The notes under the pieces are model-generated. The model saw only the letters and a list, made by a program, of their open reading frames with translations, had not been told where the DNA came from and did no database searches. This document shows positions 4,657 through 60,664 of a stretch of 64,000 nucleotides of DNA, piece after piece. This stretch comes from Euprymna scolopes (lineage: Eukaryota), in NCBI GenBank assembly GCA_053919585.1, contig CM132806.1; one strand, 5' to 3'. The first letter of the stretch is position 1. Each line of letters begins with the position of its first letter. The position numbers and the translations under genes were made by a program.

Positions 4657-4659
<3 letters not shown>

Positions 4660-4722
<63 letters not shown>
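4660..4722. repeat. (CT)n microsatellite
   Basis: Direct dinucleotide run. Confidence 0.98.
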
Positions 4723-4725
<3 letters not shown>

Positions 4726-7300: not shown

Positions 7301-8039
7301 ACCTTTACTCAATCATGGCTGATGGAATGAGAGCATTCTACTCCAGTGGATAAAATGAAAGGTTCCATTCAAAATTCAATACAGATCACCAAGTTTGACA
7401 AAATATACTGTAAGAAGGTTGAAGCTTACAAATAATTCTTTCTGTTTTTTAATCAATTTTATGAATTAATTATAATTATTCCCTTTATTTAATTACTCCT
7501 TTATTATAAAGCAGTCAAACAACAGTAATCACTTTGTTAAATTATTCCAATAAAAAACTTTATCTAATAAAAACACTTTATGTAGGATACAATTTATTGG
7601 ACTACTTACACATTTTTACCTTTTCTAAGTTGGTTCGATTGAAAATGTCAACTAAAATGTTTGTGTAAGCACATGCCTTCCAACTCAACACTTTTCCAAC
7701 ATTTGATATCAAATTTTTCTCAACCCCTTTTTTTAATGATGGGCTCCTTGAATTCAATTTTGTTCCAATCCTGCCTAAATAAATAGTATGTAACTAAAAT
7801 TTTATTTATTCTGACAATTTCTTCTTCCCAGAAAGATTGTATTTTAAATAGTTTACAGAATTGAGTTAGCTAAACAATATTTCTGGAGTTTGACATTTAG
7901 TCATTTTCTTTAAAAAACTGCCTTTACCAACCGACAGATCTCAACTACTACCAATCACATAGTAAAATGATGACACCAACCTGACAAGCTAAAAACGGAA
8001 AAGAAACAATAATGGAATGCAGGTCGGAGATGATTTAAA

Positions 8040-8410
8040 CACTCCTATCTGTTAACTAGCATTGATTGTTTTTCTCGGTAAAAGCATTTCATTTAAGTGA
8101 TATTGTTACTGAAACTCGTGTGATGAGTGTGTTATTAAGATGTCCCTACACCAATTACCAATTATCACGGTATTAATTCGATTTCCATCTACTTAAGAAT
8201 CTTCCAAAATCTTAGTTACAAAACGCACACAGACAAGTTACAATCCAGCTTCCAACGAAAGGATTGAGCGCTTTTATCATCAGTTGAAATCTACTTTACA
8301 TGCTGCTTCTGATCCTCAACAATGGATCTAATGTGTATGCTTCTTGAAATTATACTTTCAAAGATGCACGAACCTTGTCTTCCGACATATTCTACTACTA
8401 CATACCATGG
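8040..8410 (+). pseudogene. Gypsy integrase fragment
   Basis: TSYNPASNERIERFYHQLKS resembles the integrase TTxYHPxxNGxxERxHxxLK motif. Confidence 0.6.
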
Positions 8411-8468
8411 TAAATATGTCCATTAGTTAAAAAAACACTGTAAAACTATATATATATATGTATATATA

Positions 8469-9150
8469 CTAGCGAAAGTACCCGTCGTTGACTGGGTTAA
8501 AAAACAGCCTACAGAAAATGGACTCTGATTTATGAAAGCATGATAGGTTATGAAAAGGAAGGGTTGTAAAGAGATAGCTTCGAATTTGTGGGTATCAAAA
8601 CCAAAGCAAAATATGATGAAAGTAAAAATAAAATAGATAAACCCCATAATTTATTATACCATACCTGTTCACACTGAAACACTTATCACAATATTCTGTG
8701 AATCTATATTAAAAAACCTTGTTAAACTTTGTGACATATTTCCATTCTATGGAGGTCAGGTGCGAACGAACACCTCATAATTTTATTATACCATATTTCT
8801 TCAAACTGAAACATAATTATCAAAGTATAATTACGCAGATAGATATGAAAATTATTTATTAAAGTTTGTGCCTATTTCCATTCTATGGAGGGCAGGCGCG
8901 AACACAGACCCCACAATTTTATTATACCATCCCTATTTAAGTTAAAACATACTTAAACGTTTTTTTTTATTTTTTTAGTTTTTATTTCCATACTTTGTGG
9001 ACCAGGCGCGATCGCAGACCCCACAATTTTTATGAACTACCGTTCTGCCAGATCAAACATACCCATTCCTGTGTCTCGATACATCTTCTATCATTATATG
9101 TAATCAGTTTTTTTAAATATTCAACCATATAGGAGCCTATTCGTGACCAG

Positions 9151-9188
<38 letters not shown>

Positions 9189-9206
9189 TCAGCTTTATAT
9201 TATAGA
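8469..9206 (-). mobile_element. Non-autonomous Helitron
   Basis: Minus strand begins A|TC followed by (TG)n and ends with a GC hairpin (8480-8497) plus CTAG|T; internal tandem units of about 130 bp. Confidence 0.8.
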
Positions 9207-9375
9207 TACAAAGAGAGAGATACATTAACATTCCCATTTATACACAGGCCAACAGACAAAATAAACATGTCTGCTCAATTCCTCCTGAACATAATGTGTC
9301 TCGATACATCTTCTATCATTATATGTAATCAGTTTTTTAAAATAGTCAACCATATAGGAGCCTATTCGTGACCAG

Positions 9376-9406
<31 letters not shown>

Positions 9407-9513
9407 TTCAGCTTTATATTATAGATACAAAGAGAGAGATACATTAACATTCCAATTTATACACAGGCCAACAGACAAAATAAACATGTCTGCTCAATTC
9501 CTCCTGAACATAA
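9070..9513. repeat. About 220-bp tandem duplication spanning the Helitron 5' end and its flank
   Basis: 9070-9294 versus 9295-9513; near-identical, differing in CA-run length and about 3 bases. Confidence 0.92.
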
Positions 9514-10399
9514 TGTGATAGCCGAAACAAACAGATGTACTCAATTTCTCTTGCATTGACAACAACTTTTTCTCTTGAAAATTGTTCTTTACCAATCTTT
9601 TATTTCGCATTGCTTAAGCAATTTATTGTATAAATAAATTTTATATGAATATTAATCTCTGTTATATGCAGTTCCTCTTTTTCATGCTTGGACTGTCCAG
9701 GGTCAATAGATTGGCACACCTTACATTGCTCCACCACCTCTTGAACATTGTCAATTTTTATGTTATGATTCTCTTTCCTGGCTAGGTTCTCTTCTTTCCA
9801 AAATGATACATATTATGCAGGTTCTTCAGATCTTCTACTCCACAGCACACCAAAGCCACATCCTTCTTTTACCGTAGTTGGGGCCTTTTTCACTCTGGTC
9901 ACTCTATCCACTTTTTCTGTGATGGAACCAAGGTTACAGTTATCTTCAGTCCAAATTCTCTGATCAGGTTTCCAAGTGCTCCAAGTCGATGTTTGATAAG
10001 CATATCAACTGTCCCTTTCGTCCTAATCTTCTGACACTTTTGATTTAATCCATGATGCTGAGTCCATTTATGCACCCACTGTCTTTAACCCTCATTTCAA
10101 ATTCAAATTGATGCCCTTTACTGTGGTATCGCACTCTGCAACATTGACGTGAGTACTATTATATTTTATAGGCAAGCAACATCCTCAATAGTTACTTATA
10201 TTTCTAACAAAGCTCCTTATGCCAAACTGCTAGTGTCACTCAATATTACCACTTTTTGAGCTGCTTTTTATATACTATTCTCCCTTTACAAGATCTACCC
10301 TTTTCACTTCCTCAATGACCTCTTATATCATGTGCAGCACCTCTTTTTCAATTGCATCTTCCCATTGGTCTTCACCAGTTTCCCTTTTAGTAAAGCTGC

Positions 10400-18912: not shown

Positions 18913-19085
18913 NNNNNNNNNNNNNNNNNNNNNNNNNNNNNNNNNNNNNNNNNNNNNNNNNNNNNNNNNNNNNNNNNNNNNNNNNNNNNNNNNNNNNNNN
19001 NNNNNNNNNNNNNNNNNNNNNNNNNNNNNNNNNNNNNNNNNNNNNNNNNNNNNNNNNNNNNNNNNNNNNNNNNNNNNNNNNNNNN
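18913..19085. other. Assembly gap (N run)
   Basis: Run of n. Confidence 1.
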
Positions 19086-41469: not shown

Positions 41470-41880
41470 TTGCTTATTAAAAAATTGAGTATTTTTTACG
41501 ACAGTACCCACTGTGCTATAAACACCCCCGATATCCACATGTTAAAAACATCTTTTGAAATAAACAATCCCAACCTCGCCATGTTTTGGCTTTCAGGGGT
41601 GTTTACTCCATCTTAACATGGGGCGGTTGAGGTATTTATACTACGCTGGGTACTAAAAAATTAATAAAATAAAAAATCAACCAATATTAAACAACAGTAC
41701 AAAGCGTAGTGTAAAAACCTTTTACATTTCCATGTTTGGAACGGCTTGCGAATTTAACACCTCCTACCTCCCCATGTTAAGAACAGCGTTCCAAGTTGAG
41801 GTGTTTTTCCAAAATCCATTCTTAACATGGGGAGATTGGAGGTGTTTATGCTACACTAGGTACTGTTGTAAAAAATACCA
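41470..41880. repeat. Inverted-repeat (foldback/MITE-like) element
   Basis: About 57-bp imperfect inverted arms at 41490-41545 and 41821-41878, with internal partial copies of the same motif. Confidence 0.65.
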
Positions 41881-44900: not shown

Positions 44901-45177
44901 TGTGCACTATCGATGCAGGTATGTTGGGTGGTTCTACTTTGGCTTTTACTTTACTGTGCCAGCATTGTCATACTCTTGTCAGTTAGTTGACTAGTACTGC
45001 TATTAGACTATAGTCTTTAACTATGTCTACAAATGTGTTGAGTCCTCTTCATAGCAGCATTTTGCTGGCTGCCTTCATGGTTGGTTGGTACTTTCCTACA
45101 TATAGTACCTTTGCCTGCCACTGACATGTCAGGTTAACTCCTTTTAACACTTTGCTAGGTTAAAGTTTGGCACATTA

Positions 45178-45201
45178 CACAGTGGGTTCGCAAGCGGACA
45201 T
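45178..45201 (+). repeat. Left RSS-like TIR: heptamer + 6 bp + CAAGCGGACAT
   Basis: CACAGTG-GGTTCG-CAAGCGGACAT, read directly. Confidence 0.9.
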
Positions 45202-45936
45202 ATGGAATTTTTGCAACTTCCCCAAATGACTATAAAACTTAGAAAAGTGCAAAGTTCAGTTTCTGTAGTATCAAAAAATGGTATTATTTATCTTCTAAAA
45301 ATGATTATTGATCAAGATATGCCAGCTGGAAGCTTGCGAATTTTGATCGTTCACAACCTTGCGATAACATAAAAATTACCAAGCAGCAACTTTGGGTGTA
45401 CCTGAGTAATTGTCAAAAATTTCTTCCAAAACCTCTGTACATGTCCCATAAGTCCCCGAAATATAAGGCCAGATGTCTAAAATTGAATTAAATGCGAAAA
45501 GTTGGATCTATGGTCAGCTATTGGGCCTCTTTTGTGGGATTTTCCGGAAAATTTATGACACAGATTAACAGTTTTTTCCTTAAAAAAAGCCCGAAATTTG
45601 ACCCCGATCTGTACACTTTCACCGACGATTGCAAAAAAAAGCCCGAGATAAAAAAATTTATGCTTCACATATAAGAATCTAGACAAATAACACTATCATA
45701 ATCCAATTGGACAAAAAAATTCATTCTCGGGCACCATATTAATTCTGACGTAATAAAAAATATTGAGGATACCCAATTATTGTAATTTTGTGTATCCAGC
45801 AAAAATCGTCAAACGCGTATATTCATATAACTAATCAAATTTTTTTCCACATATATGACCCATACCACTTTTCCTATGTTTTTGGGGTGTAGAATCCAAA
45901 TCTGGCCTTTAAAACACCTGAAACTTAACTGTTTTC

Positions 45937-47214
45937 ATGATAAATCCAAATTCTAGCACATCATATGGTGAATTGGTATGGGAGAATCCTTCGCATGCAT
46001 CTTCCTCGTCTTGTCGCCCCGTGATGCTACTGATGGGAAACGAAAACAGAGAGAACCTTGATATCGTTACAGACATCCAGAAAGAGAGAAAGGATTGTGA
46101 ATTCATTGTCCAACATCACAGCAAACCGGTGAATATCAAGGTCGATGCAACTATGTCTATGATTGATGGTAAGATGCATAGTCTTATATCTGGTTTGGGT
46201 GGGGCATTTTGTTGCTTGTGTGCATACAGTAAAGAACAATGTCATGATTCTGTCTGTATCACCACTGGTTTCAAAATTGATCGTTCCTTGGAACAAACAC
46301 TAGCCCTCTGTGAGAAAGGAATCCATCTTCCAGAAAACCGAAAGGTTGGTGATTATGATGATCGCAAAGGTATCACCCAGGATCCTATTACCATCGAAGA
46401 TATCAACAACTTGCATCCTCTCCATAATTTGCTGAGATGCTTTGGATGGATCTTCAAGATTTGTTATCATGTCACTGCAGGACATTATTCATGGTCAGAA
46501 GCAAAGGTGGACGTATCCAACCGTATCGCTAGAGCATTGGCATTTCTAAAACAAGCGAAGGAACAGATCCAGACCAAGGTAAAGGAAGAGACATCAATCA
46601 CCATGGAGAAACCTGATCCAACAGGTCACGGGGGTACGTCTACGACAGGAAATGTGGCGTCACTTATGCTCAATACTAGCAACAGAAGGTTGTTGACTGA
46701 TGGAATTGATAACACCGAATTGAAGTTAAAGATTGACCGCATTATACTTCGTATGGCGGTTATTCTAACGATAAACAACTCGAACAAGAACATCAGGGTT
46801 GCTGAATTTCAGGAGTTTTGCCGTGAAACATACCTTCTTGTCAATAAGATATCGTGGATTCAAATCAGTCCAAGTGCACACGTTGTTCTTGGTCACAGTG
46901 CGGAACTTATTGAACAGAACGACGGCAAAGGTTTGCTGAACTTTACGGAGTGTGGCATCGAAGCAAATAACAAATTCCTGAGGCAGTATCGAATGAACTA
47001 TGCACGGAAAACAAGTCAATTTGACAATTTATCCGATTGTATTAACAGACTGTGGGATAAAAGCGACCCTATGGTGTTGAAAGTATGTGAACGACTACAG
47101 TGCACTCATTGTAAAGGAGCAGGTCACACAATACGAAGCTGTGATGAGTTGAAGGAAGCACTTCATCAATGCAACAGCGAATATGAAGCACTAGTTGCCT
47201 TCTTGTCTTACTGA
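45937..47214 (+). CDS. RAG1-like/Transib transposase, C-terminal catalytic core plus CTT-like tail (first catalytic Asp region absent)
   Basis: WENP..SSSSCRP, MIDGK (D77), CCLC, PLH, GGTSTTGNVA, HVVLGH, TECGIEANNK (E342), ARKTS..NLSD, SDP, CTHCKGAGHTIRSC; 425 codons without a stop. Confidence 0.9.
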   Translation: MINPNSSTSYGELVWENPSHASSSSCRPVMLLMGNENRENLDIVTDIQKERKDCEFIVQHHSKPVNIKVDATMSMIDGKMHSLISGLGGAFCCLCAYSKEQCHDSVCITTGFKIDRSLEQTLALCEKGIHLPENRKVGDYDDRKGITQDPITIEDINNLHPLHNLLRCFGWIFKICYHVTAGHYSWSEAKVDVSNRIARALAFLKQAKEQIQTKVKEETSITMEKPDPTGHGGTSTTGNVASLMLNTSNRRLLTDGIDNTELKLKIDRIILRMAVILTINNSNKNIRVAEFQEFCRETYLLVNKISWIQISPSAHVVLGHSAELIEQNDGKGLLNFTECGIEANNKFLRQYRMNYARKTSQFDNLSDCINRLWDKSDPMVLKVCERLQCTHCKGAGHTIRSCDELKEALHQCNSEYEALVAFLSY

Positions 47215-47349
47215 TTCTTTTTATTTAGGGTCTATTTTGTTCCAAGTTACGTTATTGATCATTCTATTCATAGTTCATTATGTTTTTCAATATTGAATTA
47301 CAGTGCGTATCGAATTGTTATTACATAGCTGCGGATTTATTACGAACTT

Positions 47350-47895
47350 TCTTGCAAATTCTGTTCAAAAACGCATTCTTAGGCCTTTTACGTCGAAAAA
47401 CCTGTTTCCCGGAATGTTGACCCGATTTCTCAAAATTAGGGGTTGAGGCACCCAGACTCCCAAAAATTTGAAAATTATACATGTAAAATTGACTTCTCTA
47501 CATTCCACGCCATTGTACGGTTCTAACAAGCCCAAAATGGCCTCCGTATCAGTATTATTTAACAAGTTCTGTCAAAAAACGTGTTTTTTGGATTTTGGCC
47601 AGATCGCCCAAAATCAGGGGTTTTGGCCCCTTTGACCCCCCAAAATTTCAAAAATTTTAGAGAAATGTTTTTTTCTGTCTTCTACTCCCTCATTCGGTTC
47701 TAACAAACCCTAAATGGCCCCTACATCGATATTATTTGACGAGTTCTGTCAAGAAACTCGTTTTTTTGGATTTTGGCCAGATTGCCTAAAATCCAGGCTT
47801 TCGGCCCCCTTGACCCCCCAAAATTTCAAAAATTTTTGGGAAATGTTTTTTCCTGTCCTCTACTTCCTCATAAGGTTCTAAAAAGCCCTTATGGC
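47350..47895. repeat. About 178-bp subterminal tandem repeat (about 3 copies) in the right arm of the transposon
   Basis: GGTTCTAA(C/A)AA recurs at about 47519, 47696 and 47874; units share TTCTGTCAA..GGATTTTGGCCAGAT..GACCCCCCAAA. Confidence 0.85.
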
Positions 47896-47930
47896 TATAA
47901 ATGAAGTAGTTTTTTCTAATTTATAGTTAA

Positions 47931-47966
47931 ATGTCCGCTTGACCCCCCCCCTCTGGGCCCACTGTG
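47931..47966 (-). repeat. Right RSS-like TIR: heptamer + 18 bp + CAAGCGGACAT
   Basis: Reverse complement reads CACAGTG-GGCCCAGAGGGGGGGGGT-CAAGCGGACAT. Confidence 0.9.
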
Positions 47967-48789
47967 CATTATTCACTGAGTGCAACCAGCTTGCATCCTG
48001 ATCCGTCGACCTCTAGCGTGATCTCAATGGACAGTGAACCTGCTTCCACCCAAAGTGTAAAATCCCTACCATTTACATACTAATCACTTTGTAAAAGATT
48101 GTCCTGATGTATTCCATTCAATATTTCCTTCACCATAATCCTGAGTTGTTATTTCATCATCCCTGCCAGTTGTAACTTTGTTGGCGTAATGTTTCATGTA
48201 TACTGTAACTACTCAATGCCTTCTGCAAACTGGAAAATGACCAGTCTTCCACATACTGGAAAGATTGTTTGCCACATCATGACTGATAGAGATTTTGAAC
48301 TATCTCCCCCCCCCCCGTATCTATTACAGTCTACTGCCGTCGCTGTGAATGTGCAATCCAAACATTTGTGTTCCTTCTTGAAACTACTCGGGTAAACTCA
48401 CAGGTCAGTCAAAATTTTCCCAAATATTTCTTCACTTGTTCTGCAAATGTGAGACATTAATTGTCGAAAATGATGTCCATGTATGATGATGTGGCTGGTT
48501 GAATTGACATATAGTGGAAGTTTACTAAGTTTATAATGGATTCCATTATCAATGCAACTTTCATGCTAAGTTGTGTGAGGCAATACCTTTGCCTCTCAAT
48601 ATCACTGTCTGAAAGGGACACAATGATTTGTATGTATGCACTTTAAGATAAGATTTCTCCAATTCAATATGACAGCACCTGAGTCTTCATGGCACCAGTC
48701 CTGCAACTTCTGTGCATATATACACCAGCATTTACTGGAAAAGCGCCAACAAAGTTATTGAGCTCTCTGTAGTCTGTCACAAATCACAC

Positions 48790-51700
48790 TTTGTTCTTGT
48801 TCATCTGTACTACCGCCATTAACAGAATTAAGGCCTTAGCTGGACCTAAATCTTTTTCTAAATATGGGACCACGCATTCATTTTCCAGCTATAACTTCAG
48901 TTCTTTTTCATATTCGACTCGCGTAGGCTTTGCCATTGGGTGCATTGATATTCGATTCTTTAGTTGCTCTAGTATTCGTCCTCTCATCGATTTCCACAAG
49001 GGCGTAGTCAGGCGCATTGATTTTGGTCACAGCACACCAGGATATGTTCTTTGTAAGGAAGTGAACCACAACAGATTCAGTCAGATATACCCCTTTCCCC
49101 AACTACTTGAAGATGTCAGATCACAGTAAAAGGTCAAAGCCTAACAGTTTTATTTCGAGGATTAAGACCTCCAGGTGCAAAGGGCACAAACTGCTCACTG
49201 TAAGCTTAACTTGGATGGTCAACCCTCCTTAGTCTTGTCTCCAAGATATATAAATGCTAAGCTTAGTGTAAACACCCAACTCACCATAGCCAGAGGTGGT
49301 CGCAGGTATGGATCGGTTCTCAGTGAAAAACTCACCGGGTAGGCGAAGGAAGTTCCAAAAACGATTTCAGTTGGTGTAGTATTCAAGTTTTCTTTAATAA
49401 TAGACTAAAGTACCAAGAGAACAAGTGGTAAATGTTCATTTCATTTATACAGTTTGGGTTGGCCAGATAGGGTAGCCTTAAGCGTTCCACCATGCCATTA
49501 GGGCAAGAGTGATAGGCAGTAGACACAATGTGTGAAATTCTAAAAGATCGACAAAAGTCCCAGGAAGTATGTGAGGAAATCTGTGAACCTCTGTCGGTAG
49601 TAACAGTGGTGGGCACACTGAAAATAGAGATTCAATTCTCCATGAATAAACGGGCTACAGATTCAGAGGAAATGTCCTGCAAGGAAACGGCCACTGGCCA
49701 ACAAGTAGAACAATTTATCATAGTGAAGATGTAATTATGAGCAGCAGCAGCAGATAAAATATGCAAAAAATGAGCGTCGGGTCTAGGAAAGTTGCCGTGG
49801 GTGTGACAATGTATTTTTGTTGTCTGAGTCCATTGGCATATATCTACATTTATATTAAGTCAAAAATAATGGGCTCTTCACTGTTGCACGCTTGACAGGG
49901 TGCATTAAGTTATGAAAATGCAAAAAAACATTTTTTCCTTTCTTTGGTATCAGATGTGTAAAAAATGTCTCGCACAAGATGAACTTGTTCGAAAATGAAA
50001 TTCGTATTTTCTTCAGCAGAATAGTGGAAGTACACATAAATTCGATCAAGAAGGTATCACTTGCCTGTTCAGAAGCAATATAGTCATAATCCAGTGGTTG
50101 ATCAAGACTGTTAAGATCAAAAACGGGAGAGAATATCAGCCACAATATTCGATTCACCAGCTAAATACTGGACATCCACAGAAAATTGTGTAACAAAATC
50201 CATCTGTCATAGTTCTCTTGGAGTATGGTTCCCTGAAATGGGTGATGTAAGGGCAGCAATTTAAGGCTTATGATCCATAAAAATAGTGAATTTCCTCCCT
50301 TCCAACATACAAAAATGTTTACTGCTAAACACATAGTGCTACAAAGACATATTTATACTGACGAGTGCTCAACTTAGCAGAAAAGAAAGACAGCCCCAAT
50401 GGTGACATCAGAAGCATCCGTCAAAAGAAAAAGGTTAGTCATTGGGTTAGGATTGATGAAAGAAAATTTTGTGAAATGCACCAATGCTGTTTTGGGGGCA
50501 TGAAAACTGTCAAGGCTTCATCTATGAGAGACAAGTTTTTCTTTCACGTACAAAGTGAGTCTAATAGTTTGGAAAGGTAATTAAAAAATTTAGAGATAAA
50601 ACAGCAGTAATTGTTTACGAATCTAATATAACAGCATAGTTGCTGCAAAGAGGTGGGTACTGGAAAATCTTGAGCACTTGCACTTTCGAAGGTAAGGGCA
50701 TGTTCAGATTCGTCAATTAGGGGTCCAAGGAAATTTAGAGAGTTAACACTGAATTCACACTTTGCAACATTAATTTTTAATCCAAAGGATTATAAATGTC
50801 AGAAGACTTCAGTCACATGAATCAAATGTGCTTCTTGTGAGGAGCTTGTGATCAGGAATTCATTGATGTGCACAAAAGCAAAGGGTAATCCACGAAGGCT
50901 ATCATCAATGAACCTTTGGAATTCCTGGGCAGCATTATGCAACCCAAAAGGTAGGCGTTTAAACTTGTATAATCCAAAAAGAGTATAAATTGCAGTTTTA
51001 AGAATGTCTTCCTTGGCAACGGGTATCTGGTTGTAAGCACGGATTAACTCTACCTGAGAAAAGATGGTAGAGCCTGACAGCAAAAAGGAAATGTCATGCA
51101 AATTCAGAATCAGCAGCTGCATTGAGGGCATGGTAATTACTCCACAATCTCCAGTCTCCTTCTGATTTCTTGAGTACCATGTGAAGCAGGAATGACCAAG
51201 AGGGTCGTATTTTAGTGAGATTCATCATGTGCTAAAATTCCGAGCGGGCTAGAGCCAGTTTTTCTGGACACAGTTGTTGAGGTTTGGTGTGCACCAGACA
51301 CCACAAGTTGTGATATGATGGCACATATGGTGTTTAATATTCTCTGAGTGAGAAAATGGCTGGGTGAGTTCAAGAAAATTATTTTAACAGATTGGTAAAA
51401 ACTGTATTGGATGGAGTAGCTATGCAAATTCTTGGTGTATCACATGAAAGTATTCTGCAATGGACAAAAAGAGATGTCTTTGAGACACAGCTTTTTAGCT
51501 TGAGTTGGATAGCCTATAGGTGTTTCTTGGTGCTGATGGTTTTGCTCAGGTCGTTATCCCTACCTCAGGTTATTTACTTCCTTCTAACCCATACCACTTA
51601 TTTTCATGTCCAAATTAGCTACTGCAACTGCATCTCAGCCGTGCCAATCACTTGTGTTTTTCAATTACCTGACCATTCTATCAGTTGATCTCCAGCATAA
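48790..51700 (-). mobile_element. Decayed CsRn1/Kabuki-like Gypsy pol
   Basis: RT IFSQVELIRAYNQIPVAKEDILKTAI..LPFGLHNAAQEFQRFID (50799-51131); integrase TTDRGSQ..STAYH..NGMVER (49383-49616). Confidence 0.82.
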
Positions 51701-52066
51701 TAGCACTCATCTCTTTAACTACTTTAAATTTTTGAGCAAACAAAAAATAAGTCTCTTCCAAATCTAGAAGTGTAATTGTTGATGTTTAATTTTCAGAAAC
51801 AGCTCCAAAATTCTTATTCAATCACAAAGTGACTCAATGAACATTTGTATTCGTTAAAAAATACTTAATGTAATAAAAATCACTGCGTATTCTATTTTTG
51901 TTTTTTTTTTTATATACACTAAATTTTAAATAAAACTACAATTACCGTTTTTGTAAAAGAAATTGATTTTTTGGATAAAAAGTTAGAAAATTAAGCTAAA
52001 AATTACAGAATTTTGTCAAAATATTTTCAATTTTTCTTAACAAATTTCATAAATTCCTTCCAAAAT

Positions 52067-52199
52067 NNNNNNNNNNNNNNNNNNNNNNNNNNNNNNNNNN
52101 NNNNNNNNNNNNNNNNNNNNNNNNNNNNNNNNNNNNNNNNNNNNNNNNNNNNNNNNNNNNNNNNNNNNNNNNNNNNNNNNNNNNNNNNNNNNNNNNNNN
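52067..52199. other. Assembly gap (N run)
   Basis: Run of n. Confidence 1.
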
Positions 52200-53149
52200 A
52201 ATTGAATCCATTTTGTGACTCTTGGCTCCTTTTTTCATGAAAGATGGATAAATTTCTTGTGAAAAACTGCCATTTTTTTTAGAATTTTTCTATAATTTTC
52301 AGAAAATTAGTATATTTTATGACTGGAATTCTTCATTCTAAGATAAAAAAAGTTTTTCTTGTGCATTAATTATCCTTGCCTCTCATATGTTTCATTTTTT
52401 ATATCCATTTGCCTTTGTGATGATACATAATTGCTCCTAGACCTACAACTAACCTAAAGTCCGAGTGGAAAGCTTCCTCCTCCTATAAAGACCCTCTTAA
52501 AACCACATAATTGTCTAAAAAACACAATTTATTTTCCATAAAAGATGGTTAACTGCCCTAAAACGTTAGAATGACATTAAAATGTCAGATTAATTTATAT
52601 TAAATTTTTATATTAAATTGATATTTTTTTTAATTTCTGACAAGTTTTTTAGTGTGTCAATATTGAATTGCCTAAAATAGAATCACATTTGGGGAAGCAG
52701 GTGAAGGCGATTTAGCAGATCTTAATGTAAAATAATACTAAAGAAACCTTGCAATATATTCATTTCGAAACAGTCATAATATTAGATTTAATTTTGTATT
52801 TTAACTAAGATATAGCATTTTTACTATAAAAAATGTAATGTAAAAAATGTGGCAAAGCATGTATAGTCTTAAAGAGGGACAATATCCAGACATAGGCTCA
52901 AAAATGGTGATAACTTCCTTATTTGGGTCAGATTTTTTAAAAAAAAAGTAAGATTCTTTCTTAGATCAGAAAGCTCTGTCTATATCTACCATTCTTGAGA
53001 TGTTTTAAGCAATTTCAATTTTTTCTATGTGTATTGCTAATTCAAAGCAACAAAGGCCGAATTCAACAGCTCAAAAGATAAGCATAAGAAGAACTAGTTG
53101 GATGAATGTCAACATGTTTGGTGTTGATGTTGGAACATAATGAGTGTAA

Positions 53150-53950
53150 GAAAAGAAGAAAACGTGATAGATTCTAATGGTTTTCAAAGAAATACATTTT
53201 CCTATCACCTATGAGATTCTAGAAGGAGTGGCAGAATAAACTGTAATGTGTCATCGCACCTTTGTTAGAGAATAATAAATTTGATACAGTTCAGTGCAAA
53301 GAAGTTGATAAAATGATTGTCAAGTGTGTAATAAAGATTCTAGTGTTGAAGAGGAGTAGCTCAAGTGATATGGAGGGAAAAGTTTTTGAAATGATTTTCA
53401 AACAGGATTGTGATGGAGCAGGTCAACTAGTAGAAGTGAAAGAGAAAATGTTGACTACCAACCATGGATTAAGAAGTCAGATCCTCCAGAGAAAGTGTAC
53501 TTGACATAATTTAAGAGAAGACTACTGGTCTGTATGTAGACAGATGCAATACTGGTGGTGGAAAAGGTGGAATATCAACAAATGGCCCTCTTTGTAGAGG
53601 TTATTGAATGCATATATGATTTGACTTCTAAAGAGAACTTGTTGCTTTTGCAGCAATTCTTTATCTTGTATCTTTATTAAAAAAGGTTAAGATAAAAGAA
53701 CTTTGCTAAAGTTCAGTGAGGAACGTGTGAGAACTTTAAAAAGGTGAAGCTAAATGGGATACTTCATCATTCTGTTGAATTGATGAGTATGGACAATAAC
53801 CGGATTAGGGACCTTGTCAGTGAATGTTTGGAATCTAATAATGAAAACATAATTATTTACAATTCCTTTCAAAGAAAGCTTTACCTATTGAACAACTCCC
53901 TGATGTTGTGTATAGATTACTTAAACGTTTTAATCCTGGTATTGTGAAAA
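53150..53950 (+). pseudogene. Second, decayed RAG1/Transib-like transposase relic
   Basis: FKQDCDGAGQ (first catalytic Asp, codon 53412), GGGKGGISTNGP (about 53554-53589) and GILHHSVELM..SECLESNN (about 53756-53842) occur in the expected order. Confidence 0.7.
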
Positions 53951-55288
53951 AAGTACTTTACTGAATGTGGTGCAAATGATCATACAATTGAATCTCATGC
54001 AAGGCTTTTCAATCTACCAAATAAATTTTTTCAGTTACTTTAAAGATATATAGTGCTTGATTACTAAATAGTTACAATTTATATCCTTTAATTCGTTAAT
54101 AATATTTCTCTATATATTCTTATTGAATATTCATGAATCTCTTCTAGTGTTTATAACTGATTGTGTAATGTTGTCCGCAGTTTCAGTCGCAAAAGAAAAT
54201 TAAGATAAAGGATAGGAAATAACTCCAACTCATTTGTTGTTTGTAGTAACAACATTTATTTCCTCATTCTCTCTTTACCACTGTAATGTCCCTAACATGA
54301 TCATCTTCTCAAGCATCCTTCATGCCTCGTACAAAATCGCAAACATTATTTATGTTTACCCTGCGGTCATTCTTTCTCCTTTTTATAATCTTCCTTTCTC
54401 TCCACTGATGACGTCACTTTACATTTATTTACGTATATGCATCTGCGCTATGTTATAATTGTAGATTTTTTTTATTTTGGTCACATTAGTATTTATAAAT
54501 ATGATTGAATATAATTAATTCCAAGTATAGTATTGAAAATATTTAATTCTCACAGAATAACTTCTATAATTCTGTTTACTGAGAAAATTTTCAATGAAGG
54601 TGTTCATTGTTTTACAAAAGAACACTTCAGGAAATTATGATTTTGGTTAAATATTTAATTATTAATGAAATTTATTAAATTTCTTGACTACTGCATTCAG
54701 TTTTTTAACATAGCAACGTCTAAAGAGAACATTCTTTTGAAAATTATCAGAAAATCGGAAATTTATGCCAATTGAATTGTAAATAAAGACTTAATTTATT
54801 TTTTATTTACAGATGTTCCTGCTTTAAAACATTTCATAGATTTGGATGGATCGTCATTTCCTTGTGATTTACTTTGTATTTTCTAATGTTGAATACAAAA
54901 GTGAAATTTATTGTAAAAGTATTTTCTCTGGATTATGTGTTTCAAGAAACGATTTCTAAATAATAAAAAAATATCACATGCTGAATACAAGGATTTTTTT
55001 TTAAACCAGCTGAGTTTTGTTGAACTTTGTTTACAGGAATGTCTACTTTAAAATGATATATGAATTTAGACTTGAGAAAGAAATTATAGTAATCTGTTTA
55101 TGAACATTTTTATACCCAATGAATATTTCCATGAACTTGAATTGTTTAAGGTGAATCATATAGGATCACATTCAAATAAAGCAATGAAGTAAATAAATTA
55201 ATTTTAAAGACATAAGAAATCATAACAGAAAATAAATATTTTATCTGGTGATTTATCAATTCCAAGAAATTCCAACCAAAACAAAATA

Positions 55289-55810
55289 ATGGAAACGCAT
55301 ATAAAACAGAAGTCGTATTCTTGTAATGTGTGTGATCATTCTTTTTCTTATAAATCAAATTTAGTCAGACATATGCGAACTCACAGTGGTGAAAAGCCAT
55401 ATTCTTGTAATGTATGTGACTATTCTTTTTCTCGTGAATCACATTTAGTCAGACATATTAAAACACATACTGGAGAGAAGCCATATCCTTGTAACGTGTG
55501 TGATTATTCTTGTTCTCGCAAATCAAGTTTAGTTATACATATGCGAAAACACTCTGGCGAAAAGCCATATTCTTGTAACGTTTGTGATTATTCGTTTTCT
55601 TATAAATCAAGTTTAATCACCCATATTCAAACACACACTGGAGAGAAGCCATATTCTTGTGAAATATGTGAATATTCTTGCTCTCTTAAATCAAGTTTAG
55701 TTGTACATATGCGAACACACAGTGGTGAAAAGCCATATTCTTGTAATGTGTGTGATTATTCTTGTGCTTCTAATTCAAGGATAGCAAGACATATGCGAAT
55801 ACACAGGTGA
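55289..55810 (+). CDS. Tandem C2H2 zinc-finger protein, six intact fingers (may be a terminal exon or a pseudogene)
   Basis: Six CxxC-x12-HxxxH units with H(T/S)GEKPY linkers; a possible splice acceptor lies upstream at about 54812. Confidence 0.85.
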   Translation: METHIKQKSYSCNVCDHSFSYKSNLVRHMRTHSGEKPYSCNVCDYSFSRESHLVRHIKTHTGEKPYPCNVCDYSCSRKSSLVIHMRKHSGEKPYSCNVCDYSFSYKSSLITHIQTHTGEKPYSCEICEYSCSLKSSLVVHMRTHSGEKPYSCNVCDYSCASNSRIARHMRIHR

Positions 55811-56158
55811 AAAGCAATATTCTCGTAATATATGTGAATATTCTTGTTCTCAGGTGTTGCACAAACTTGAAAAGACCTTGAATTTTGATATTTGCCTTGA
55901 AAAAGCTTTAATTCTATTATTTCCTTGAAAAGTCCTTGAAAATATGGAAAATGTTTTAAAAAGCCTTGAAAATCATATTCTTTGCCCAGTAAGAATTTGT
56001 ATTGAAATATTAAAAATAAAATAAAAAATATTATTAAATTATTTTTTAAGTATTAATAGAAAATACCATTAAAATATTATTTAAATACTTAAAATAAAAT
56101 CGAAATATGTTGCTTTGAAATTGTGTCACATTATTGTGAAGCTATTTCCCTTTATTAT

Positions 56159-56321
56159 GAAATTTGTTTTTACTTTTAAATTTTGAATTTCCAGTATCGT
56201 GGATACAAGAGTTATGTCCCTTTATCACAAAACTACTTGATCAGGTAGTTTCGTGATAAAGGGATGCTACTTTTTGTATCCGCAATACTGAAAATTCAAA
56301 ATTTTAAAATAAAACAAATTC
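56159..56321. repeat. About 160-bp loopless imperfect palindrome
   Basis: Centre at TGA|TCA (56240/56241); the arms pair outward to AATTTGTTTT / AAAACAAATT. Confidence 0.88.
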
Positions 56322-57404
56322 AGCATAGACCAATCCACAATGGGGAAAATAACAATATTTAATCATGCTTGATTGGCCAAATATAAGTGAGTGAGGGAAT
56401 GTAAATATGATTATTGTGTATATCAAAAGATGTTTGTTTTGAGCAAAATGAGTGAAAGTGTGTTAAAATCGCACATGGCTGGCATTAAACACAAAATGAA
56501 TGAACGCATGTGTCAGGAATTAACACTCAAATTGACAAGTTACAATTTTGTTCCGAAACCATCAATTTCAACTGGCAACCCCAAATCAATGTATGAAATT
56601 TCAGCCCTGTCACAAACTAGAACTTCAGATGGAAGCTACAAACTAACTCTATTTTTGGATTTTGCTTCAAATAATGACACGTTTTGAGCAGAGATTTTGT
56701 AGACATTGAAAACTGTAAATGACCACGCATCGTATTGGTCAAATGAATATGTTGGAAATGTATTACAGTTGATGTTCTTTGATAGTGCAATTGCTCTTAA
56801 GTTTGTGTGTGGCGAAAAGAAAACAGCATATTTGTGTGTATTTGGAATGCACCCTATTTATTCTTAAAACAATATAGAGTCAAATTAAAGGAAAATGCTG
56901 TTTATGATTTGATGAAAGTTTTAATAAAAAGTGCCAGAAAAACAAATGGATATCCACATGAGATAGTGGACCCTAGAAAACAAAGTTGTGTCTGACTATT
57001 TTGGATCACAGTTTTTAGGTAAGTTAAGTTTAACTTTTTTCAAATGTTTATAATGTCAATTTAATTATGGCAATATGAACACAAAAAATAAATTCAATTA
57101 CATGTAAATAAAAATAATCCAAATTTAATTTTGTAATTTAAAATAAATTTTATTTGTAAATATTTAAAATCTTCAGTCTTTTTTTGTGCTTATACACTTA
57201 TGTTACTATGTTATTTCTTTAATCTTATTTCCAAGTTAAATTTGAGTTTTACAATATCTTTTTATATTGTTAGGTGAAAGTACAGAATAGTTAAAACAAT
57301 TCCCTCCTCCCCATGTTAAGAATGGCTTTATAAATAATAACATCATTTCAGCACAGTAACTTTTTTTATAATCCAAAAGAAATTCAACCTACATGCATAC
57401 AAAA

Positions 57405-58760
57405 AAGGAAGTGGGGATTTAGCAGAGAAGCCAATAAACTGAAAAAAAGGGTAAAAAATTCAAGTATATATAATCAATAAATGTTACGACACTCAATAAA
57501 AGTTACTTTTACATCTAGCTCATTTCTGTTGTCTTTATGTATTTTTTTAATGTTATTTATTTGATCTAAAAACAATTTAGTTTTTACAAGCAGATTTAAA
57601 ACAATATAGCAATGGTGTCACCTTTTTGTTGGGAAAGAAAGCCTCATTTTGAAATTTGTGATTTCTATGAAAGTTTTTTTTGGGGGAGGGGGGGGGTACA
57701 ATACACATTGGTACAAAAGAATGGTCAAAAAACAATCATATAACAAATAAATGTTCCTCTTTACTTGCCTCCCCATGAGGGCAGAGTTAGACACCAAGGT
57801 CGGTTTTTAATGTGGGGGAAGGAACAATAATAAAAAAAATTGTCTCATAAAGGATTTCTCATCCACTAACCAAGACCAAAAGATTGAAGTGTAGTATCAG
57901 AACAGATATTACACTTTGATTTTGGCCTTAAGTTATGTTATCAAAGGCAAGATAAGTTACTCTTCTACCAAACTGGATAAGTTTTTAGTGGTTTTACTTA
58001 GATTAAAACGTTTATTTGGTCTGCAAAATAGTGTCGAGTTTTAGGTAGAAAAAAAAATGGCCACGAATTGACATCTAAATATTTGAAGTTTTGATAATGA
58101 TTTAAAAATAAAAATAAAAAATATTCTGTTAAAAACTCATCCAATAAATGTCACATTAGAATATATTGGGTGGGTTTCTAACAATACTTTCTATAATTTT
58201 TTTAATTTTAAGTCATTATCACAAATTCAAATATTTAGGTATCAATTTGCAGCTATTTTTCTTGTTTTCACCTAACACTCAACACTATGTTTTTTAACCT
58301 CATAAACTTTTTATAGTAAGACCACTAAAATCTTATCCAGTTAAGTGGAAGTGTATCTTGCATTTAATAACCTTTATTTGTTATATATTTGAACTTTAAC
58401 CACTTTTTCTTAACAACATATATTGTAAAACAAACCTCTTTTTCATGCATATCTTAAACACCTCCCCAAGAAAAACGCACAAGTTTCCGAGATATGCACA
58501 AAAAAGACATCATAGAAACCACAAACTACAAAGCAAGGCTTTGTTTCCAAATAAGGTGTTGCTATCACCATGTTGTTTTAAATCCGCTCATAAAAACTGA
58601 ATTTTGAGATGAAATAAAAAGCATTATAAACACAAAAAAATGAGCCAGGTACATATAATAGTAACTTTTATTGGTTGCAGTAACATTTATTCATTGTATA
58701 TTTGAACTTTTTTACCCTTTTTTTCCATTTATTGGCTTCTTTGCTAAATCCCCGATTTTT
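57405..58760. repeat. About 1.35-kb imperfect foldback centred near 58153
   Basis: Paired blocks 57412-57530/58640-58753, 57580-57620/58555-58600 and 57955-58148/58160-58360. Confidence 0.8.
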
Positions 58761-59057
58761 CCAATTTATTTTTGCAAAAAAATGATTGTCAACCTGTCCA
58801 ATTTGATATTCTATTTTAAAATTATGCACATGGGGATGAATAAGAAATTAAAATATGCCAAAATTTAATTTGTCTTTAAAAAGAGTCAAAATTATTGTGA
58901 ATAGTGCATTTTTTTCATCGCACGATTGTGCCATAATTACATGCTTAGAAATTTATAATAAAAAATAATTTTTGTAGTGATTTGAATTTTTATTATTTGG
59001 ATTTACATTTTGTAAAATTCTTAATGCATTTAATTATCTTTTGCTTATTTCAAATTG

Positions 59058-59565
59058 GTTATCTTCAAGTTTTACCTCCCTGTGTTGATAAAGCTTGAGA
59101 AAGGTTTTCTGTTGTACTGTCAGCTGGATAGTGTAGACCATAAAAATTCTCTACCAAATTTTTTCTTCCACATTTTTCATTTTTCACGTTCATATTTTTT
59201 TTATTATGAAGTTTATATTATAATAAAAAAATATATATTTTTACTTTTAATATATTTAAAAAGTAGTTTACATAAAAACATTTATTTTAATTTTTAATCA
59301 AACAACATAAAAAAATGAGATGTTTTTTATTTTTCACTTTGAAATGTTTATTTAAAATTTTATAATAAAAATATATTTATGAAATCAAGTGTTGATTTTA
59401 TTTTTTTTAATTAAACATAATAAAATTGAATTTAACCAGAATTTCAAAATGAAAAATAAAAAACAAACATGGTAAAAAAAACTTTGTGGAGATTTTTTAT
59501 AGTCTATACCAACAGAGTTGCAGAAACCCTATCTTAAGCCTTGGGGGCTAAACTTGTAAATAAGC
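59058..59565. repeat. Second imperfect inverted-repeat element in the same intron
   Basis: 59058-59185 pairs with 59452-59565. Confidence 0.6.
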
Positions 59566-60664
59566 CTATTATTTATCAAGTGTTATTTAAGTGTATTTTT
59601 CTTATTACCAATGGTTAGTTTGATCAATAAACTTCATCTGCAAAAAAATTTTGTTTGCTTTTATAAGATATTTGTTATACTACATGAAAGAACTTTGTGT
59701 AGAATAACACACACTTCATGGTATTCTATTTCAACTTATTCTACATGAAAGAACTTCATTAGAAAATCATTATGAACCGGCCATCATAGCATGTTTTTAT
59801 TAAGTTTTATGTGTTTTATTTTATAAAGTGTATTAAATCTTTTTCAGGTCATGCAACAGCAGAGAGAATGTTACAACACTTTGAAAAAGGTGTAATAGGG
59901 AGTAGACTGGATGTCAAGGATATGGAGCAAGTTAGTATATATAGATGGGTCAAATGTGAACTGGGAATTTTTTACACTGTTGAGAAAAAAAACTTAAAGA
60001 TGATTATGATTCCTCAATGATAAACATTGGATTTACAATATTCACAACTCTTTCACAAGTGGAGCCACTGCCACAGGATAGAACATTGAGTCATTTACCT
60101 CAAGTTTGTATTTCTTCTTCAAGGACTTTCCTGTATGGCTTGAAGACTACCTCAATATATCACAGACCCAACTGAAGCTACTGAAGTTTGCAAATCACAA
60201 GTGGTTGGAAAATATCCCAATATATAATAGACCACTCCTTATCTTGGATGATATTATTAAGTATGTTAAAAGTGTGGAGGAAAAGAAACTTCCCATGCTA
60301 ACCTGCAAGTCCAATGAGACAGTTTGCCAAGTGACAAAGGACAAGCTTCTGATTCCAAAGTTGCAATGTTTAAAGTCTGTTGCAAGTCACTTGCAGCTTT
60401 TCTTGAGTGTTTATCAAACTGACAGATCCATGGTGCCATTTTTGGAAGAAGACCTCTGTTAGATGGTCAGAAGATTGATGAGGTGCTACATAAGATCTGA
60501 AAGTGTACCTGTATCTGATGAGAAGTTGAGCAAAGAAGTGAGGCTCAATTAAAAGAAGATGGAACTTGGGTGCCTTATAGAAAAGAATATCAAGGAAGCT
60601 GCAAAGGATGGGGTGTTTGAGAGACAGATGCATACTTTCAGAATTAAGACTATTAAATTTCTTG

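What the first reader, a model, noticed from the sequence alone, without database searches (positions are those of the whole stretch)
45178..47966. RAG1-like transposon with RSS heptamer ends, an intact TSD and no RAG2: candidate Transib-to-RAG intermediate
Seen in sequence: both tips are CACAGTG(GG), the TSD CATTA is perfect, and the 425-aa ORF has no stops. The host Gypsy around it is badly decayed, which suggests a young insertion. Established: CACAGTG is the V(D)J RSS heptamer; 5-bp TSDs and CAC ends define Transib and ProtoRAG/RAGL transposons; IDGK and ExxExxNK correspond to mouse RAG1 D708 and E962, and CxxC plus HxxxxH to its zinc site. Inference: a recently mobile single-gene family between insect Transib and RAG1L-RAG2L transposons. 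Related proteins may already be in databases, so novelty is unverified.
Basis: partly seen in the sequence, partly recalled or inferred. Interest (0 to 1): 0.92.

Follow-up and report, generated by a model that had tools for sequence, protein, structure and literature searches.

The report
Truncated Transib transposon copy, RAG1-like
This is a real but defective copy of a Transib DNA transposon: its gene has lost the front third, including one of three catalytic residues. It belongs to a branch of Transibs already described in 2022 as the closest single-gene relatives of the RAG1 ancestor, so it is a new member of a known kind.

Summary
The sequence observation holds. Window 45178-47966 (2789 bp) ends in CACAGTGGG / CCCACTGTG, is flanked by a perfect 5-bp duplication CATTA, and carries a stop-free 425-codon ORF. 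The ORF aligns to HzTransib, amphioxus RAG1L and RAG1, with the second Asp, the Glu and the CxxC/HxxxxH zinc site in place.

The copy is not intact. Full-length relatives (707-711 aa, 61-89% identical, 3.95-4.54 kb elements) show that the window lacks about 1.6 kb. The missing part includes roughly the first 280 codons and the first catalytic Asp. The ATG comes from the 5' leader. It is therefore a non-autonomous internal-deletion copy.

The family has one gene and no RAG2-like ORF. A full-length relative in a 4.77-Mb genome contig has its own perfect TSD (CCCTA). The family shows three features:
- bipartite, asymmetric ends (9-bp CACAGTGGG and 10-bp AAGCGGACAT, spaced 5 nt at the 5' end and 15-17 nt at the 3' end);
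- a zinc-domain segment of about 55 aa that HzTransib-type proteins lack;
- the RAG1L-type C-terminal Cx2Cx3GHx4C knuckle.

These are the features Tao et al. 2022 used to define "Subgroup I" Transibs, which they proposed as Transib-to-RAG1L intermediates. In a tree the window ORF groups with ctenophore Subgroup-I-type proteins, apart from the HzTransib-type clade. A copepod (Caligus) carries 63%-identical copies.

The parts
45173..45177 (.). Left copy of the 5-bp target-site duplication, CATTA
   Evidence: Read directly; identical to 47967-47971.
45178..45201 (+). 5' terminal inverted repeat. It is bipartite: a 9-bp element CACAGTGGG (the heptamer CACAGTG plus GG), a 5-nt spacer, then a 10-bp element AAGCGGACAT.
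   Evidence: The same layout with a 5-nt spacer is seen at the 5' ends of relatives L001, L023, L047, L068, L072 and L032.
45202..45947 (+). Non-coding 5' leader of the element
   Evidence: Collinear with the 5' leaders of related elements: L023 183-951 at 72.5% identity, L068, and L001 517-637 and 878-1261. All three frames are full of stops.
45948..45956 (+). Junction of the internal deletion. About 1.6 kb of the full-length element is missing here, corresponding to L001 ~1262-2886: the rest of the leader plus roughly codons 1-280.
   Evidence: Leader homology to L023 ends at 45947. ORF homology to L001 starts at 45957/45958.
45937..47214 (+). Remnant ORF of 425 codons plus stop, equivalent to residues ~285-707 of the full-length transposase. 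It keeps the second catalytic Asp (MSMIDGK, 46153-46173), the zinc-site CxxC (46210-46221), HxxxxH (46879-46896), the catalytic Glu (46948-46974) and the CTT*-type knuckle Cx2Cx3GHx4C (47101-47142). It lacks the first catalytic Asp. The start codon and the first ~7 codons derive from the leader.
47392..47889 (+). 3' subterminal tandem repeats, about 178-bp period and 2-3 copies
   Evidence: The homologous repeats occur in the full-length relative L001 at 4330-5055.
47931..47966 (-). 3' terminal inverted repeat. Read on the minus strand it is CACAGTGGG, a 17-nt spacer rich in G, then AAGCGGACAT.
   Evidence: The 3' ends of relatives have spacers of 15 nt (L001, L072) or 16 nt (L032, L069).
47967..47971 (.). 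Right copy of the target-site duplication, CATTA
   Evidence: Read directly.

Best explanation
Window 45178-47966 is a non-autonomous, internally deleted copy of a single-gene Transib DNA transposon of the 'Subgroup I' type. It inserted by cut-and-paste transposition and duplicated the 5-bp target CATTA.

Shown:
- Both bipartite ends and the TSD are intact.
- The internal region is a 5' leader fused to the last ~60% of the transposase gene.
- Full-length relatives encode a 707-711-aa RAG1-core-like DDE enzyme. In P0002 numbering it has D259, D359 and E624, the zinc site C374/C377/H597/H602, and a C-terminal Cx2Cx3GHx4C knuckle.
- Those relatives have no second gene.

Inferred from the solved HzTransib, BbRAGL and RAG mechanisms:
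- A full-length transposase made elsewhere in the genome would pair one short-spacer (5') end with one long-spacer (3') end.
- It would nick at the CAC, form hairpins on the flanking DNA, and integrate the excised element with a 5-bp stagger.
- The heptamer would be read by the catalytic core. The second 10-bp element would be read by the N-terminal NBD-like region and/or the CTT* knuckle.

The window copy cannot make an active enzyme, because the first Asp and the first strands of the RNase H fold are missing. It could move only in trans. Most of its sequence divergence predates the loss of selection, so the deletion and insertion are probably recent.
For: Ends, TSD and ORF.

Homology:
- HzTransib scores E 1.8e-17 and amphioxus RAG1L 2.7e-6 for the window ORF.
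- The family profile scores 238 bits (HzTransib), 174 bits (RAG1L) and 105-118 bits (RAG1).
- An AlphaFold model of the full-length relative has pLDDT 80. Its Foldseek matches are mouse RAG1 core (E 4e-23), HzTransib (TM 0.83) and BbRAGL (TM 0.77).

Truncation:
- Full-length relatives of 707-711 aa cover 99% of the ORF at 88-89% identity.
- tblastn finds only residues 275-707 in the window.
- The leader is collinear with L023, L068 and L001 up to 45947.
- The D259 column is empty for the window ORF.

Single gene:
- L001 element 517-5055 (4539 bp) and L072 element 4962-8914 (3953 bp) each hold one long ORF and nothing else of 100 aa or more.

Mobility of the family:
- L072 has its own perfect TSD, CCCTA.
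- Six different 5' flanks are seen among relatives.

Subgroup I features:
- TIR spacers are 5 nt versus 15-17 nt.
- C377-H597 spacing is 210-233 aa, against 164-166 aa in HzTransib-type proteins. The hhalign gap lies at P0002 ~394-438.
- The knuckle CTHCKGAGHTIRSC matches the CTT* motif Cx2Cx3GHx4C of RAG1L (PMC7204232).
- In the tree the window ORF sits in a 24-row clade (support 99) with Mnemiopsis P0033 and Bolinopsis P0067. A 12-row HzTransib-type clade is separate (support 100).
- P0067 closely resembles the MleTransib_3931 protein printed in Tao et al.'s supplement.

Youth:
- dN/dS against L001 is 0.20.
- Codons changed only in the window lineage are 14 synonymous and 8 non-synonymous. 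Neutral decay would give about 1:3.
Against: - No full-length copy and no empty site are present in the 64-kb window. Trans-mobilisation in this genome is therefore inferred, not shown.
- The two full-length metagenome elements L001 and L032 do not show matching TSDs. I attribute this to chimeric assembly of repeats, but that is an assumption.
- Subgroup I membership rests on features, and on a tree with a ctenophore proxy and midpoint rooting. No RAG1L, RAG1 or bacterial sequences could be included in the tree.
- The open 430-codon frame and the synonymous-rich substitutions could also mean that the truncated protein is itself under selection.
Confidence: 0.85

Rival explanations
1. One reading: an intact, autonomous, recently mobile single-gene RAG1-like transposon of a new family that bridges insect Transib and RAG1L-RAG2L elements.
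For: Intact tips and TSD, an open 425-aa frame, two of the three catalytic residues and the zinc site. The family is more RAG1L-like than the HzTransib type.
Against: The ORF is only the C-terminal ~60% of a 707-711-aa protein and lacks the first catalytic Asp. The element is 1.2-1.75 kb shorter than full-length relatives. The bridging class was already defined by Tao et al. 2022. Thousands of relatives are in databases.
Confidence: 0.04
2. The truncated ORF is itself functional. It might be a dominant-negative or repressor form of the transposase, comparable to truncated P-element repressors, or a protein on its way to host domestication. It would keep the zinc domain, the C-terminal domain and the CTT* DNA-binding knuckle.
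For: The frame is open for 430 codons in an otherwise decayed neighbourhood. Window-specific codon changes are 14 synonymous to 8 non-synonymous.
Against: - The ORF lies between intact TIRs with a TSD, so it is still a transposon copy.
- Its start codon is an accident of the leader-ORF junction.
- No relative shares this junction. The ~430-aa database proteins begin at a conserved internal Met of split full-length genes, not at a deletion.
- The substitution pattern is equally explained by a recent deletion.
Confidence: 0.07
3. A degenerate RAGL (RAG1L-RAG2L) transposon that has lost its RAG2-like gene.
For: A CTT*-type knuckle, a RAG2-binding-region equivalent in the zinc domain, a 5-bp TSD and CAC ends.
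Against: - Full-length relatives with intact TIRs carry no second ORF.
- Similarity is highest to HzTransib: 238 bits against 174 for RAG1L.
- The N-terminal region aligns with that of HzTransib-type proteins from residue 5.
- No RAG1 N-terminal zinc or RING domains are found by Pfam.
- The TIRs lack the A-rich TR2 next to the heptamer.
Confidence: 0.03
4. A chance arrangement of short motifs around an unrelated ORF.
For: None beyond the shortness of the individual motifs.
Against: The terminal 9-mer is enriched. Both ends, the leader, the ORF and the 3' repeats are collinear with independent elements from other samples.
Confidence: 0.01

Closest known systems
Subgroup I Transib transposons (Tao et al. 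2022, Natl Sci Rev, PMC9435367), for example ctenophore MleTransib_3931 and Hydra and bacterial members
   Same: - A single RAG1-core-like transposase gene and a 5-bp TSD.
- Asymmetric bipartite TIRs.
- Retention of the zinc-domain alpha11-alpha12 equivalent.
- A CTT1/CTT* zinc knuckle.
- Greater similarity to RAG1L than HzTransib-type elements show.
- The window family clusters with ctenophore proteins of this type.
- The Hydra TIR printed in the paper's supplement even begins CACAGTGGG and has an AAGCGG/AAGTGG second element.
   Different: - The lineage differs. The nearest named relatives are copepod (Caligus, 63% identity) and then ctenophore (33-38%). Most copies come from marine plankton metagenomes.
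- The spacers are 5 and 15-17 nt.
- The window copy is a deletion derivative.
HzTransib (Helicoverpa zea) and classic insect Transibs (Subgroup II); structures 6pqn and related
   Same: - Best sequence match in the PDB.
- Same fold (TM 0.83).
- Single gene, 5-bp TSD, CAC(A)(G/A)TG ends and a DDE triad.
- Homologous N-terminal region.
   Different: - HzTransib-type proteins lack ~55 aa of the zinc domain: 164-166 aa between the Cys pair and the His pair, against 219 aa here.
- They lack the Cx2Cx3GHx4C tail.
- They form a separate clade.
RAGL / ProtoRAG transposons (amphioxus BbRAG1L-RAG2L; protostome and cnidarian RAGL)
   Same: - 5-bp TSD and CAC-heptamer ends.
- A RAG1 core collinear over its whole length (profile positions 87-653 align to BbRAG1L 9-627).
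- The CTT* motif and the zinc-domain segment that binds RAG2 in RAG1.
   Different: - No RAG2-like gene.
- No RAG1 N-terminal RING or zinc-finger region.
- No A-rich TR2 next to the heptamer.
- Lower similarity than to Transib.
V(D)J recombination signal sequences with the 12/23 rule
   Same: The exact consensus heptamer CACAGTG. The two ends differ in spacer length by 10-12 bp, about one helical turn, as 12 and 23 do.
   Different: The second element is AAGCGGACAT, not the A-rich nonamer. Counted from the heptamer, the spacers are 7 and 17-19 nt, not 12 and 23. No functional test of pairing exists.

Membership tests
Transib superfamily | 5-bp target-site duplication | tested here: met
   CATTA on both sides in the window. 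CCCTA on both sides of the full-length relative in L072.
Transib superfamily | Terminal inverted repeats that begin with an RSS-heptamer-like CAC(A/T)(G/A)TG | tested here: met
   CACAGTG at both tips. The same holds in six related elements.
Transib superfamily | A single gene for a RAG1-core-like DDE transposase | tested here: met
   Met for the family: one 707-743-aa ORF between the TIRs in L001 and L072, with the DDE columns conserved. In the window copy only the second Asp and the Glu remain; the first Asp is deleted.
Transib superfamily | Significant sequence and fold similarity to a characterised Transib transposase (HzTransib) | tested here: met
   E 1.8e-17 for the ORF, 2.9e-24 for P0002, and 2.5e-69 for the family profile. 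Foldseek TM 0.83.
Transib Subgroup I (Tao et al. 2022) | Asymmetric pair of TIRs: two conserved elements with different spacers at the two ends | tested here: met
   The spacer is 5 nt at every 5' end and 15-17 nt at every 3' end. This holds even in a relative only 26% identical in protein (L032).
Transib Subgroup I (Tao et al. 2022) | Equivalent of the RAG1 alpha11-alpha12 (RAG2-binding) region present in the zinc-binding domain | tested here: met
   There are 219 aa between the Cys pair and the His pair, against 164-166 aa in 7 HzTransib-type proteins. The profile-profile alignment shows the HzTransib-type gap opposite P0002 ~394-438. The model has helices at 400-408 and 421-425. Identity with alpha11-alpha12 is inferred from position, not from a residue-level superposition.
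Transib Subgroup I (Tao et al. 2022) | CTT1 / CTT* C-terminal tail (Cx2Cx3GHx4C) | tested here: met
   CTHCKGAGHTIRSC at 47101-47142. Also present in P0001, P0002, P0006, P0008, P0067 and others, and absent from HzTransib-type proteins. The motif definition comes from PMC7204232.
Transib Subgroup I (Tao et al. 2022) | Phylogenetic placement with named Subgroup I members and nearer to RAG1L than Subgroup II is | tested here: inconclusive
   The window ORF groups with ctenophore proteins (support 99), apart from the HzTransib-type clade (support 100). P0067 resembles the printed MleTransib_3931. Profile scores to RAG1L and RAG1 are about twice those of the HzTransib-type profile. However, no RAG1L, RAG1 or bacterial sequences could be put in the tree, and the root is at the midpoint only.
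RAGL (RAG1L-RAG2L) transposon | A RAG2-like (kelch, with or without PHD) gene between the TIRs | tested here: not met
   No second ORF of 100 aa or more lies inside full-length elements of 3953 and 4539 bp. The window element has none either.
RAGL (RAG1L-RAG2L) transposon | [quoted passage not shown] | tested here: not met
   Pfam finds no such domains in P0001, P0002 or P0006. The N-terminal region aligns with that of HzTransib-type proteins.
V(D)J RSS-like ends | Heptamer plus A-rich nonamer at 12 or 23 bp | tested here: not met
   The heptamer matches exactly. The second element is AAGCGGACAT at 7 and 17-19 nt from the heptamer.

The most novel reading that the evidence does not exclude
This copepod and marine-plankton lineage of Subgroup I Transibs may still be active. 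It has intact full-length copies with perfect TSDs. It combines the exact RSS consensus heptamer, a conserved one-helical-turn difference between its two end spacers, a RAG1L-type CTT* knuckle and a RAG2-binding-region equivalent, all without RAG2. It could then be a tractable natural system to test whether a 12/23-like pairing rule existed in a single-protein transposase before RAG2 was acquired.
Probability: 0.25. Interest if true: 0.6.

Novelty: new member of a known kind. Interest (0 to 1): 0.33.

Why it matters
The origin of V(D)J recombination from a Transib/RAGL transposon is a well-studied question. The single-gene 'Subgroup I' Transibs are the proposed stepping stone.

This window adds one defective copy of such an element. 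Through its relatives it points to an abundant, apparently recently mobile lineage in marine arthropod-like genomes. That lineage has a conserved spacer asymmetry of about one helical turn (5 versus 15-17 nt).

This helps TE annotation of the host genome. It also offers candidate full-length enzymes (P0002, P0006) for biochemical tests of end-pairing rules. It does not change the current picture of RAG evolution.

Tried and rejected
- **Pfam on the ORF and close relatives.** It gave no significant family in the local copy. The database's precomputed tag is PF26100 RAG1_RNase_H. Only the ctenophore relative P0033 hit PF12940 RAG1.
- **Word-indexed protein search with a 15-sequence alignment.** It returned only 30 close relatives and did not reach HzTransib, RAG1L or RAG1. 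I therefore could not build a tree with those references.
- **Metagenome scan with the bipartite TIR pattern.** It returned 66 loci, of which only L023, L032, L047, L068 and L069 are real relatives; the rest are chance matches.
- **TSDs in L001 and L032.** They do not match (CGCAA/GCGAC and TACCG/GGAGC). I set these aside as probable chimeric repeat assemblies.
- **Empty-site paralogue in the window.** None found.
- **LTR pair around the insertion.** None found.
- **Rfam.** Nothing in the window.
- **Third CACAGTGGG at 41507.** It has no second motif and is not an element end of this family.
- **An upstream exon.** Rejected, because the three frames of 45178-45939 are full of stops and this stretch is homologous to non-coding leaders.
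- **~430-aa database proteins as conserved short forms.** Rejected, because they start at a conserved internal Met downstream of a split in otherwise full-length genes.
- **Host species.** It could not be identified.
Full report
**1. What is in the sequence**

The window reads CATTA (45173-45177), then CACAGTGGG (45178-45186). At the other end it reads CCCACTGTG (47958-47966), then CATTA (47967-47971). The terminal 9-mer occurs three times in the window against 0.34 expected by shuffling. The third site, at 41507, has no second motif behind it and is unrelated.

Each end is bipartite. The 9-bp terminal element is followed by a spacer and then by a 10-bp element, AAGCGGACAT. The spacer is 5 nt at the left (5') end and 17 nt at the right (3') end.

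Between the ends lie four parts:
- a non-coding stretch at 45202-45947;
- an ORF of 425 codons at 45937-47214;
- a spacer;
- a ~178-bp subterminal tandem repeat at about 47392-47889.

The ORF is the only long one for many kilobases.

**2. What the ORF is**

phmmer against PDB sequences gives these matches for the ORF:
- HzTransib transposase, E 1.8e-17;
- amphioxus RAG1L, E 2.7e-6;
- mouse RAG1, weak, E 0.015.

- MSMIDGK is the second catalytic Asp.
- ECGIEANNK carries the catalytic Glu.
- CCLC and HVVLGH are the zinc-site Cys pair and His pair.

The alignment begins at HzTransib residue 137. The RNase H strand that carries the first Asp is not covered.

**3. The copy is truncated**

A database search found full-length relatives of 707-711 aa. 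They are 88-89% identical to the ORF and cover 99% of it. The ORF therefore corresponds to residues ~285-707 only.

The DNA of these relatives came mostly from marine (Tara) metagenome contigs. One, L072, came from a 4.77-Mb genome contig.

- tblastn of the full-length protein P0002 against the whole window finds only residues 275-707.
- In a 74-sequence alignment the column of the first Asp (D259 in DGLDGSGGHS) is empty for the window ORF. D359, E624, C374, C377, H597 and H602 are all present.
- The stretch 45178-45947 is collinear with the non-coding 5' leaders of related elements (L023 at 72.5% identity, L068, and parts of L001). ORF homology to L001 starts at 45957.

The copy therefore has an internal deletion of about 1.6 kb, with its junction at 45948-45956. 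The ATG at 45937 belongs to the leader. The remnant cannot form a complete RNase H active site.

**4. Architecture of the intact family**

| Element | Coordinates | Length | Main ORF |
|---|---|---|---|
| L001 | 517-5055 | 4539 bp | 707-726 aa |
| L072 | 4962-8914 | 3953 bp | 711-743 aa |

Neither element has another ORF of 100 aa or more, so there is no RAG2-like gene.

L072 has its own perfect TSD, CCCTA. Among relatives, six different sequences flank the 5' end. These points indicate a mobile family.

The TSDs of the two metagenome-assembled full-length elements (L001, L032) do not match. I regard this as probable assembly chimerism, but I cannot prove it.

All 5' ends have a 5-nt spacer and all 3' ends a 15-17-nt spacer. 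This includes L032/L069, whose protein is only 26% identical. The difference of 10-12 bp is about one helical turn.

**5. Structure**

An AlphaFold2 model of P0002, built with a 15-sequence alignment, has mean pLDDT 80 and pTM 0.71. Foldseek against the PDB returns:
- mouse RAG1 core, E 4e-23, about 640 aligned columns;
- HzTransib, TM 0.83;
- amphioxus RAGL, TM 0.77;
- the next unrelated hit, P-element transposase, at only E 1.5e-4.

**6. Place among known families**

Tao et al. 2022 (PMC9435367) split Transibs into two subgroups. Subgroup II is the HzTransib type. Subgroup I includes ctenophore, Hydra and bacterial members. Subgroup I was defined by:
- asymmetric TIRs;
- retention of the RAG1 alpha11-alpha12 (RAG2-binding) region of the zinc domain;
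- a CTT1 tail shared with RAG1L.

They proposed Subgroup I as intermediates between Transib and RAG1L. Martin et al. 2020 (PMC7204232) give the RAG1L CTT* motif as Cx2Cx3GHx4C.

Tests made here:
- (a) *TIR asymmetry.* Met (section 4).
- (b) *Zinc-domain segment.* The distance between the Cys pair and the His pair is 219 aa in the window family and 210-233 aa in its wider clade. It is 164-166 aa in seven HzTransib-type proteins. The profile-profile alignment places the HzTransib-type gap opposite P0002 ~394-438. In mouse RAG1 the corresponding distance, C730 to H937, is about 206 aa; this figure is from established knowledge and was not computed here.
- (c) *C-terminal knuckle.* The window ORF ends with CTHCKGAGHTIRSC, an exact Cx2Cx3GHx4C. 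HzTransib-type proteins have none.
- (d) *Tree.* In a maximum-likelihood tree of 74 proteins, the window ORF sits with P0001 and P0002 (support 100). That group lies inside a 24-row clade (support 99) holding Mnemiopsis P0033 and Bolinopsis P0067. P0067 closely resembles the MleTransib_3931 protein printed in Tao et al.'s supplement. Twelve HzTransib-type proteins form a separate clade (support 100). One of them, P0182, matches 6pqn at E 8e-120.
- (e) *Profile scores.* The window-clade profile scores 174 bits on BbRAG1L and 105-118 bits on vertebrate RAG1, in one stretch across the whole core including the NBD region. A comparable HzTransib-type profile scores 73 and 50-64 bits, in short stretches.

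The family is thus Subgroup-I-like and closer to RAG1L than classic Transibs are. It is still most similar to Transib (238 bits), and it lacks RAG2L and the RAG1 N-terminal domains.

The limit of this analysis is that no RAG1L, RAG1 or bacterial sequences could be placed in the tree. The rooted relationship therefore rests on Tao et al.

**7. How common it is**

The family profile matches 7395 clusters at 50% identity at E<=1e-3, and 1052 at E<=1e-30. The sea louse Caligus rogercresseyi encodes several copies. One of them, P0225, is 63% identical to P0002 over 524 aa. UniRef names it 'V(D)J recombination-activating protein 1 RNase H domain-containing protein'. That genome's published repeat annotation lists 262 CMC-Transib copies (PMC7878743). 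The host of the window is not identified; a marine arthropod is a reasonable guess only.

**8. Age**

dN/dS between the window ORF and L001 is 0.20. Codons changed only on the window lineage are 14 synonymous and 8 non-synonymous, far from the ~1:3 expected under neutrality. Most divergence therefore accumulated while the gene was under selection.

Together with the perfect TSD, intact tips and open frame, this fits a recent deletion and insertion. An alternative reading is that the truncated protein is selected for a function of its own. I give that low weight, because the start codon is accidental and no relative shares the junction.

**9. Surroundings**

Broken reverse-transcriptase and integrase fragments, in RT-then-IN order, lie on the minus strand at 49.4-51.2 kb. 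This is consistent with a decayed Ty3/Gypsy-like or BEL-like element. No LTR pair and no empty-site paralogue were found. The claim that the Transib sits inside that element is plausible but unproven.

**10. Verdict**

It is wrong that the copy is intact. The 'intermediate' status is an already published concept. I classify the finding as a new member of a known kind, of modest interest. Its most useful by-products are the conserved 5 versus 15-17-nt spacer asymmetry and the intact full-length relatives that could be tested biochemically.

Noticed in passing
window 47392-47889; L001 4330-5055: A ~178-bp subterminal tandem repeat (2-3 copies) lies just inside the 3' TIR. It is conserved between the window copy and the full-length relative, so it could hold transposase-binding or regulatory sites.
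   Followed up: partly
L032 107-4444 and L069 (3' end at 3977): These hold a Transib whose 733-aa protein is only 26% identical to P0002. It comes from contigs of the JGI metagenome collection. It has the same two TIR elements (CACAGTGGGC and AAGCGGACAT) and the same short/long spacing (5 and 16 nt). Its two copies have different flanks. The protein lacks the C-terminal CCHC knuckle. TIR conservation across such deep protein divergence is striking.
   Followed up: partly
window 49386-49631 (-) and 50802-51221 (-): Fragments of an integrase core (rve, E 4.8e-5) and a reverse transcriptase (RVT_1, E 2.7e-9), in RT-then-IN order and broken by stops. This is a decayed LTR-retrotransposon-like element. 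No LTR pair was found.
   Followed up: partly
L073 1-630 and 694-1977: P0011 is 427 aa and its cluster has 109 member sequences. It is the downstream half of a relative whose gene is split into two called ORFs 63 bp apart. The downstream ORF starts at a conserved internal Met. The split may be a short intron or a frameshift. Several other ~430-aa database entries begin at the same Met.
   Followed up: partly
protein P0212 (1174 aa): A distant relative on a very long branch. It has a ~415-aa N-terminal extension of unknown nature and a C-terminal CCHC knuckle. Pfam finds nothing in it.
   Followed up: no
window 41507-41515 (-): A solitary CACAGTGGG with no AAGCGGACAT element behind it. It is probably a chance match, or the tip of a different family.
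   Followed up: yes
window 55308-55851, 9070-9517, and 52001-60000: Tandem arrays: overlapping self-matches offset by about 84 bp and multiples at 55.3-55.9 kb, and a ~225-bp duplicate at 9.07-9.52 kb. There is also a markedly AT-rich block (GC 0.26-0.29) at 52-60 kb.
   Followed up: no
window 18913-19085 and 52067-52199: Two runs of N (173 and 133 bases). They were left as they are.
   Followed up: no
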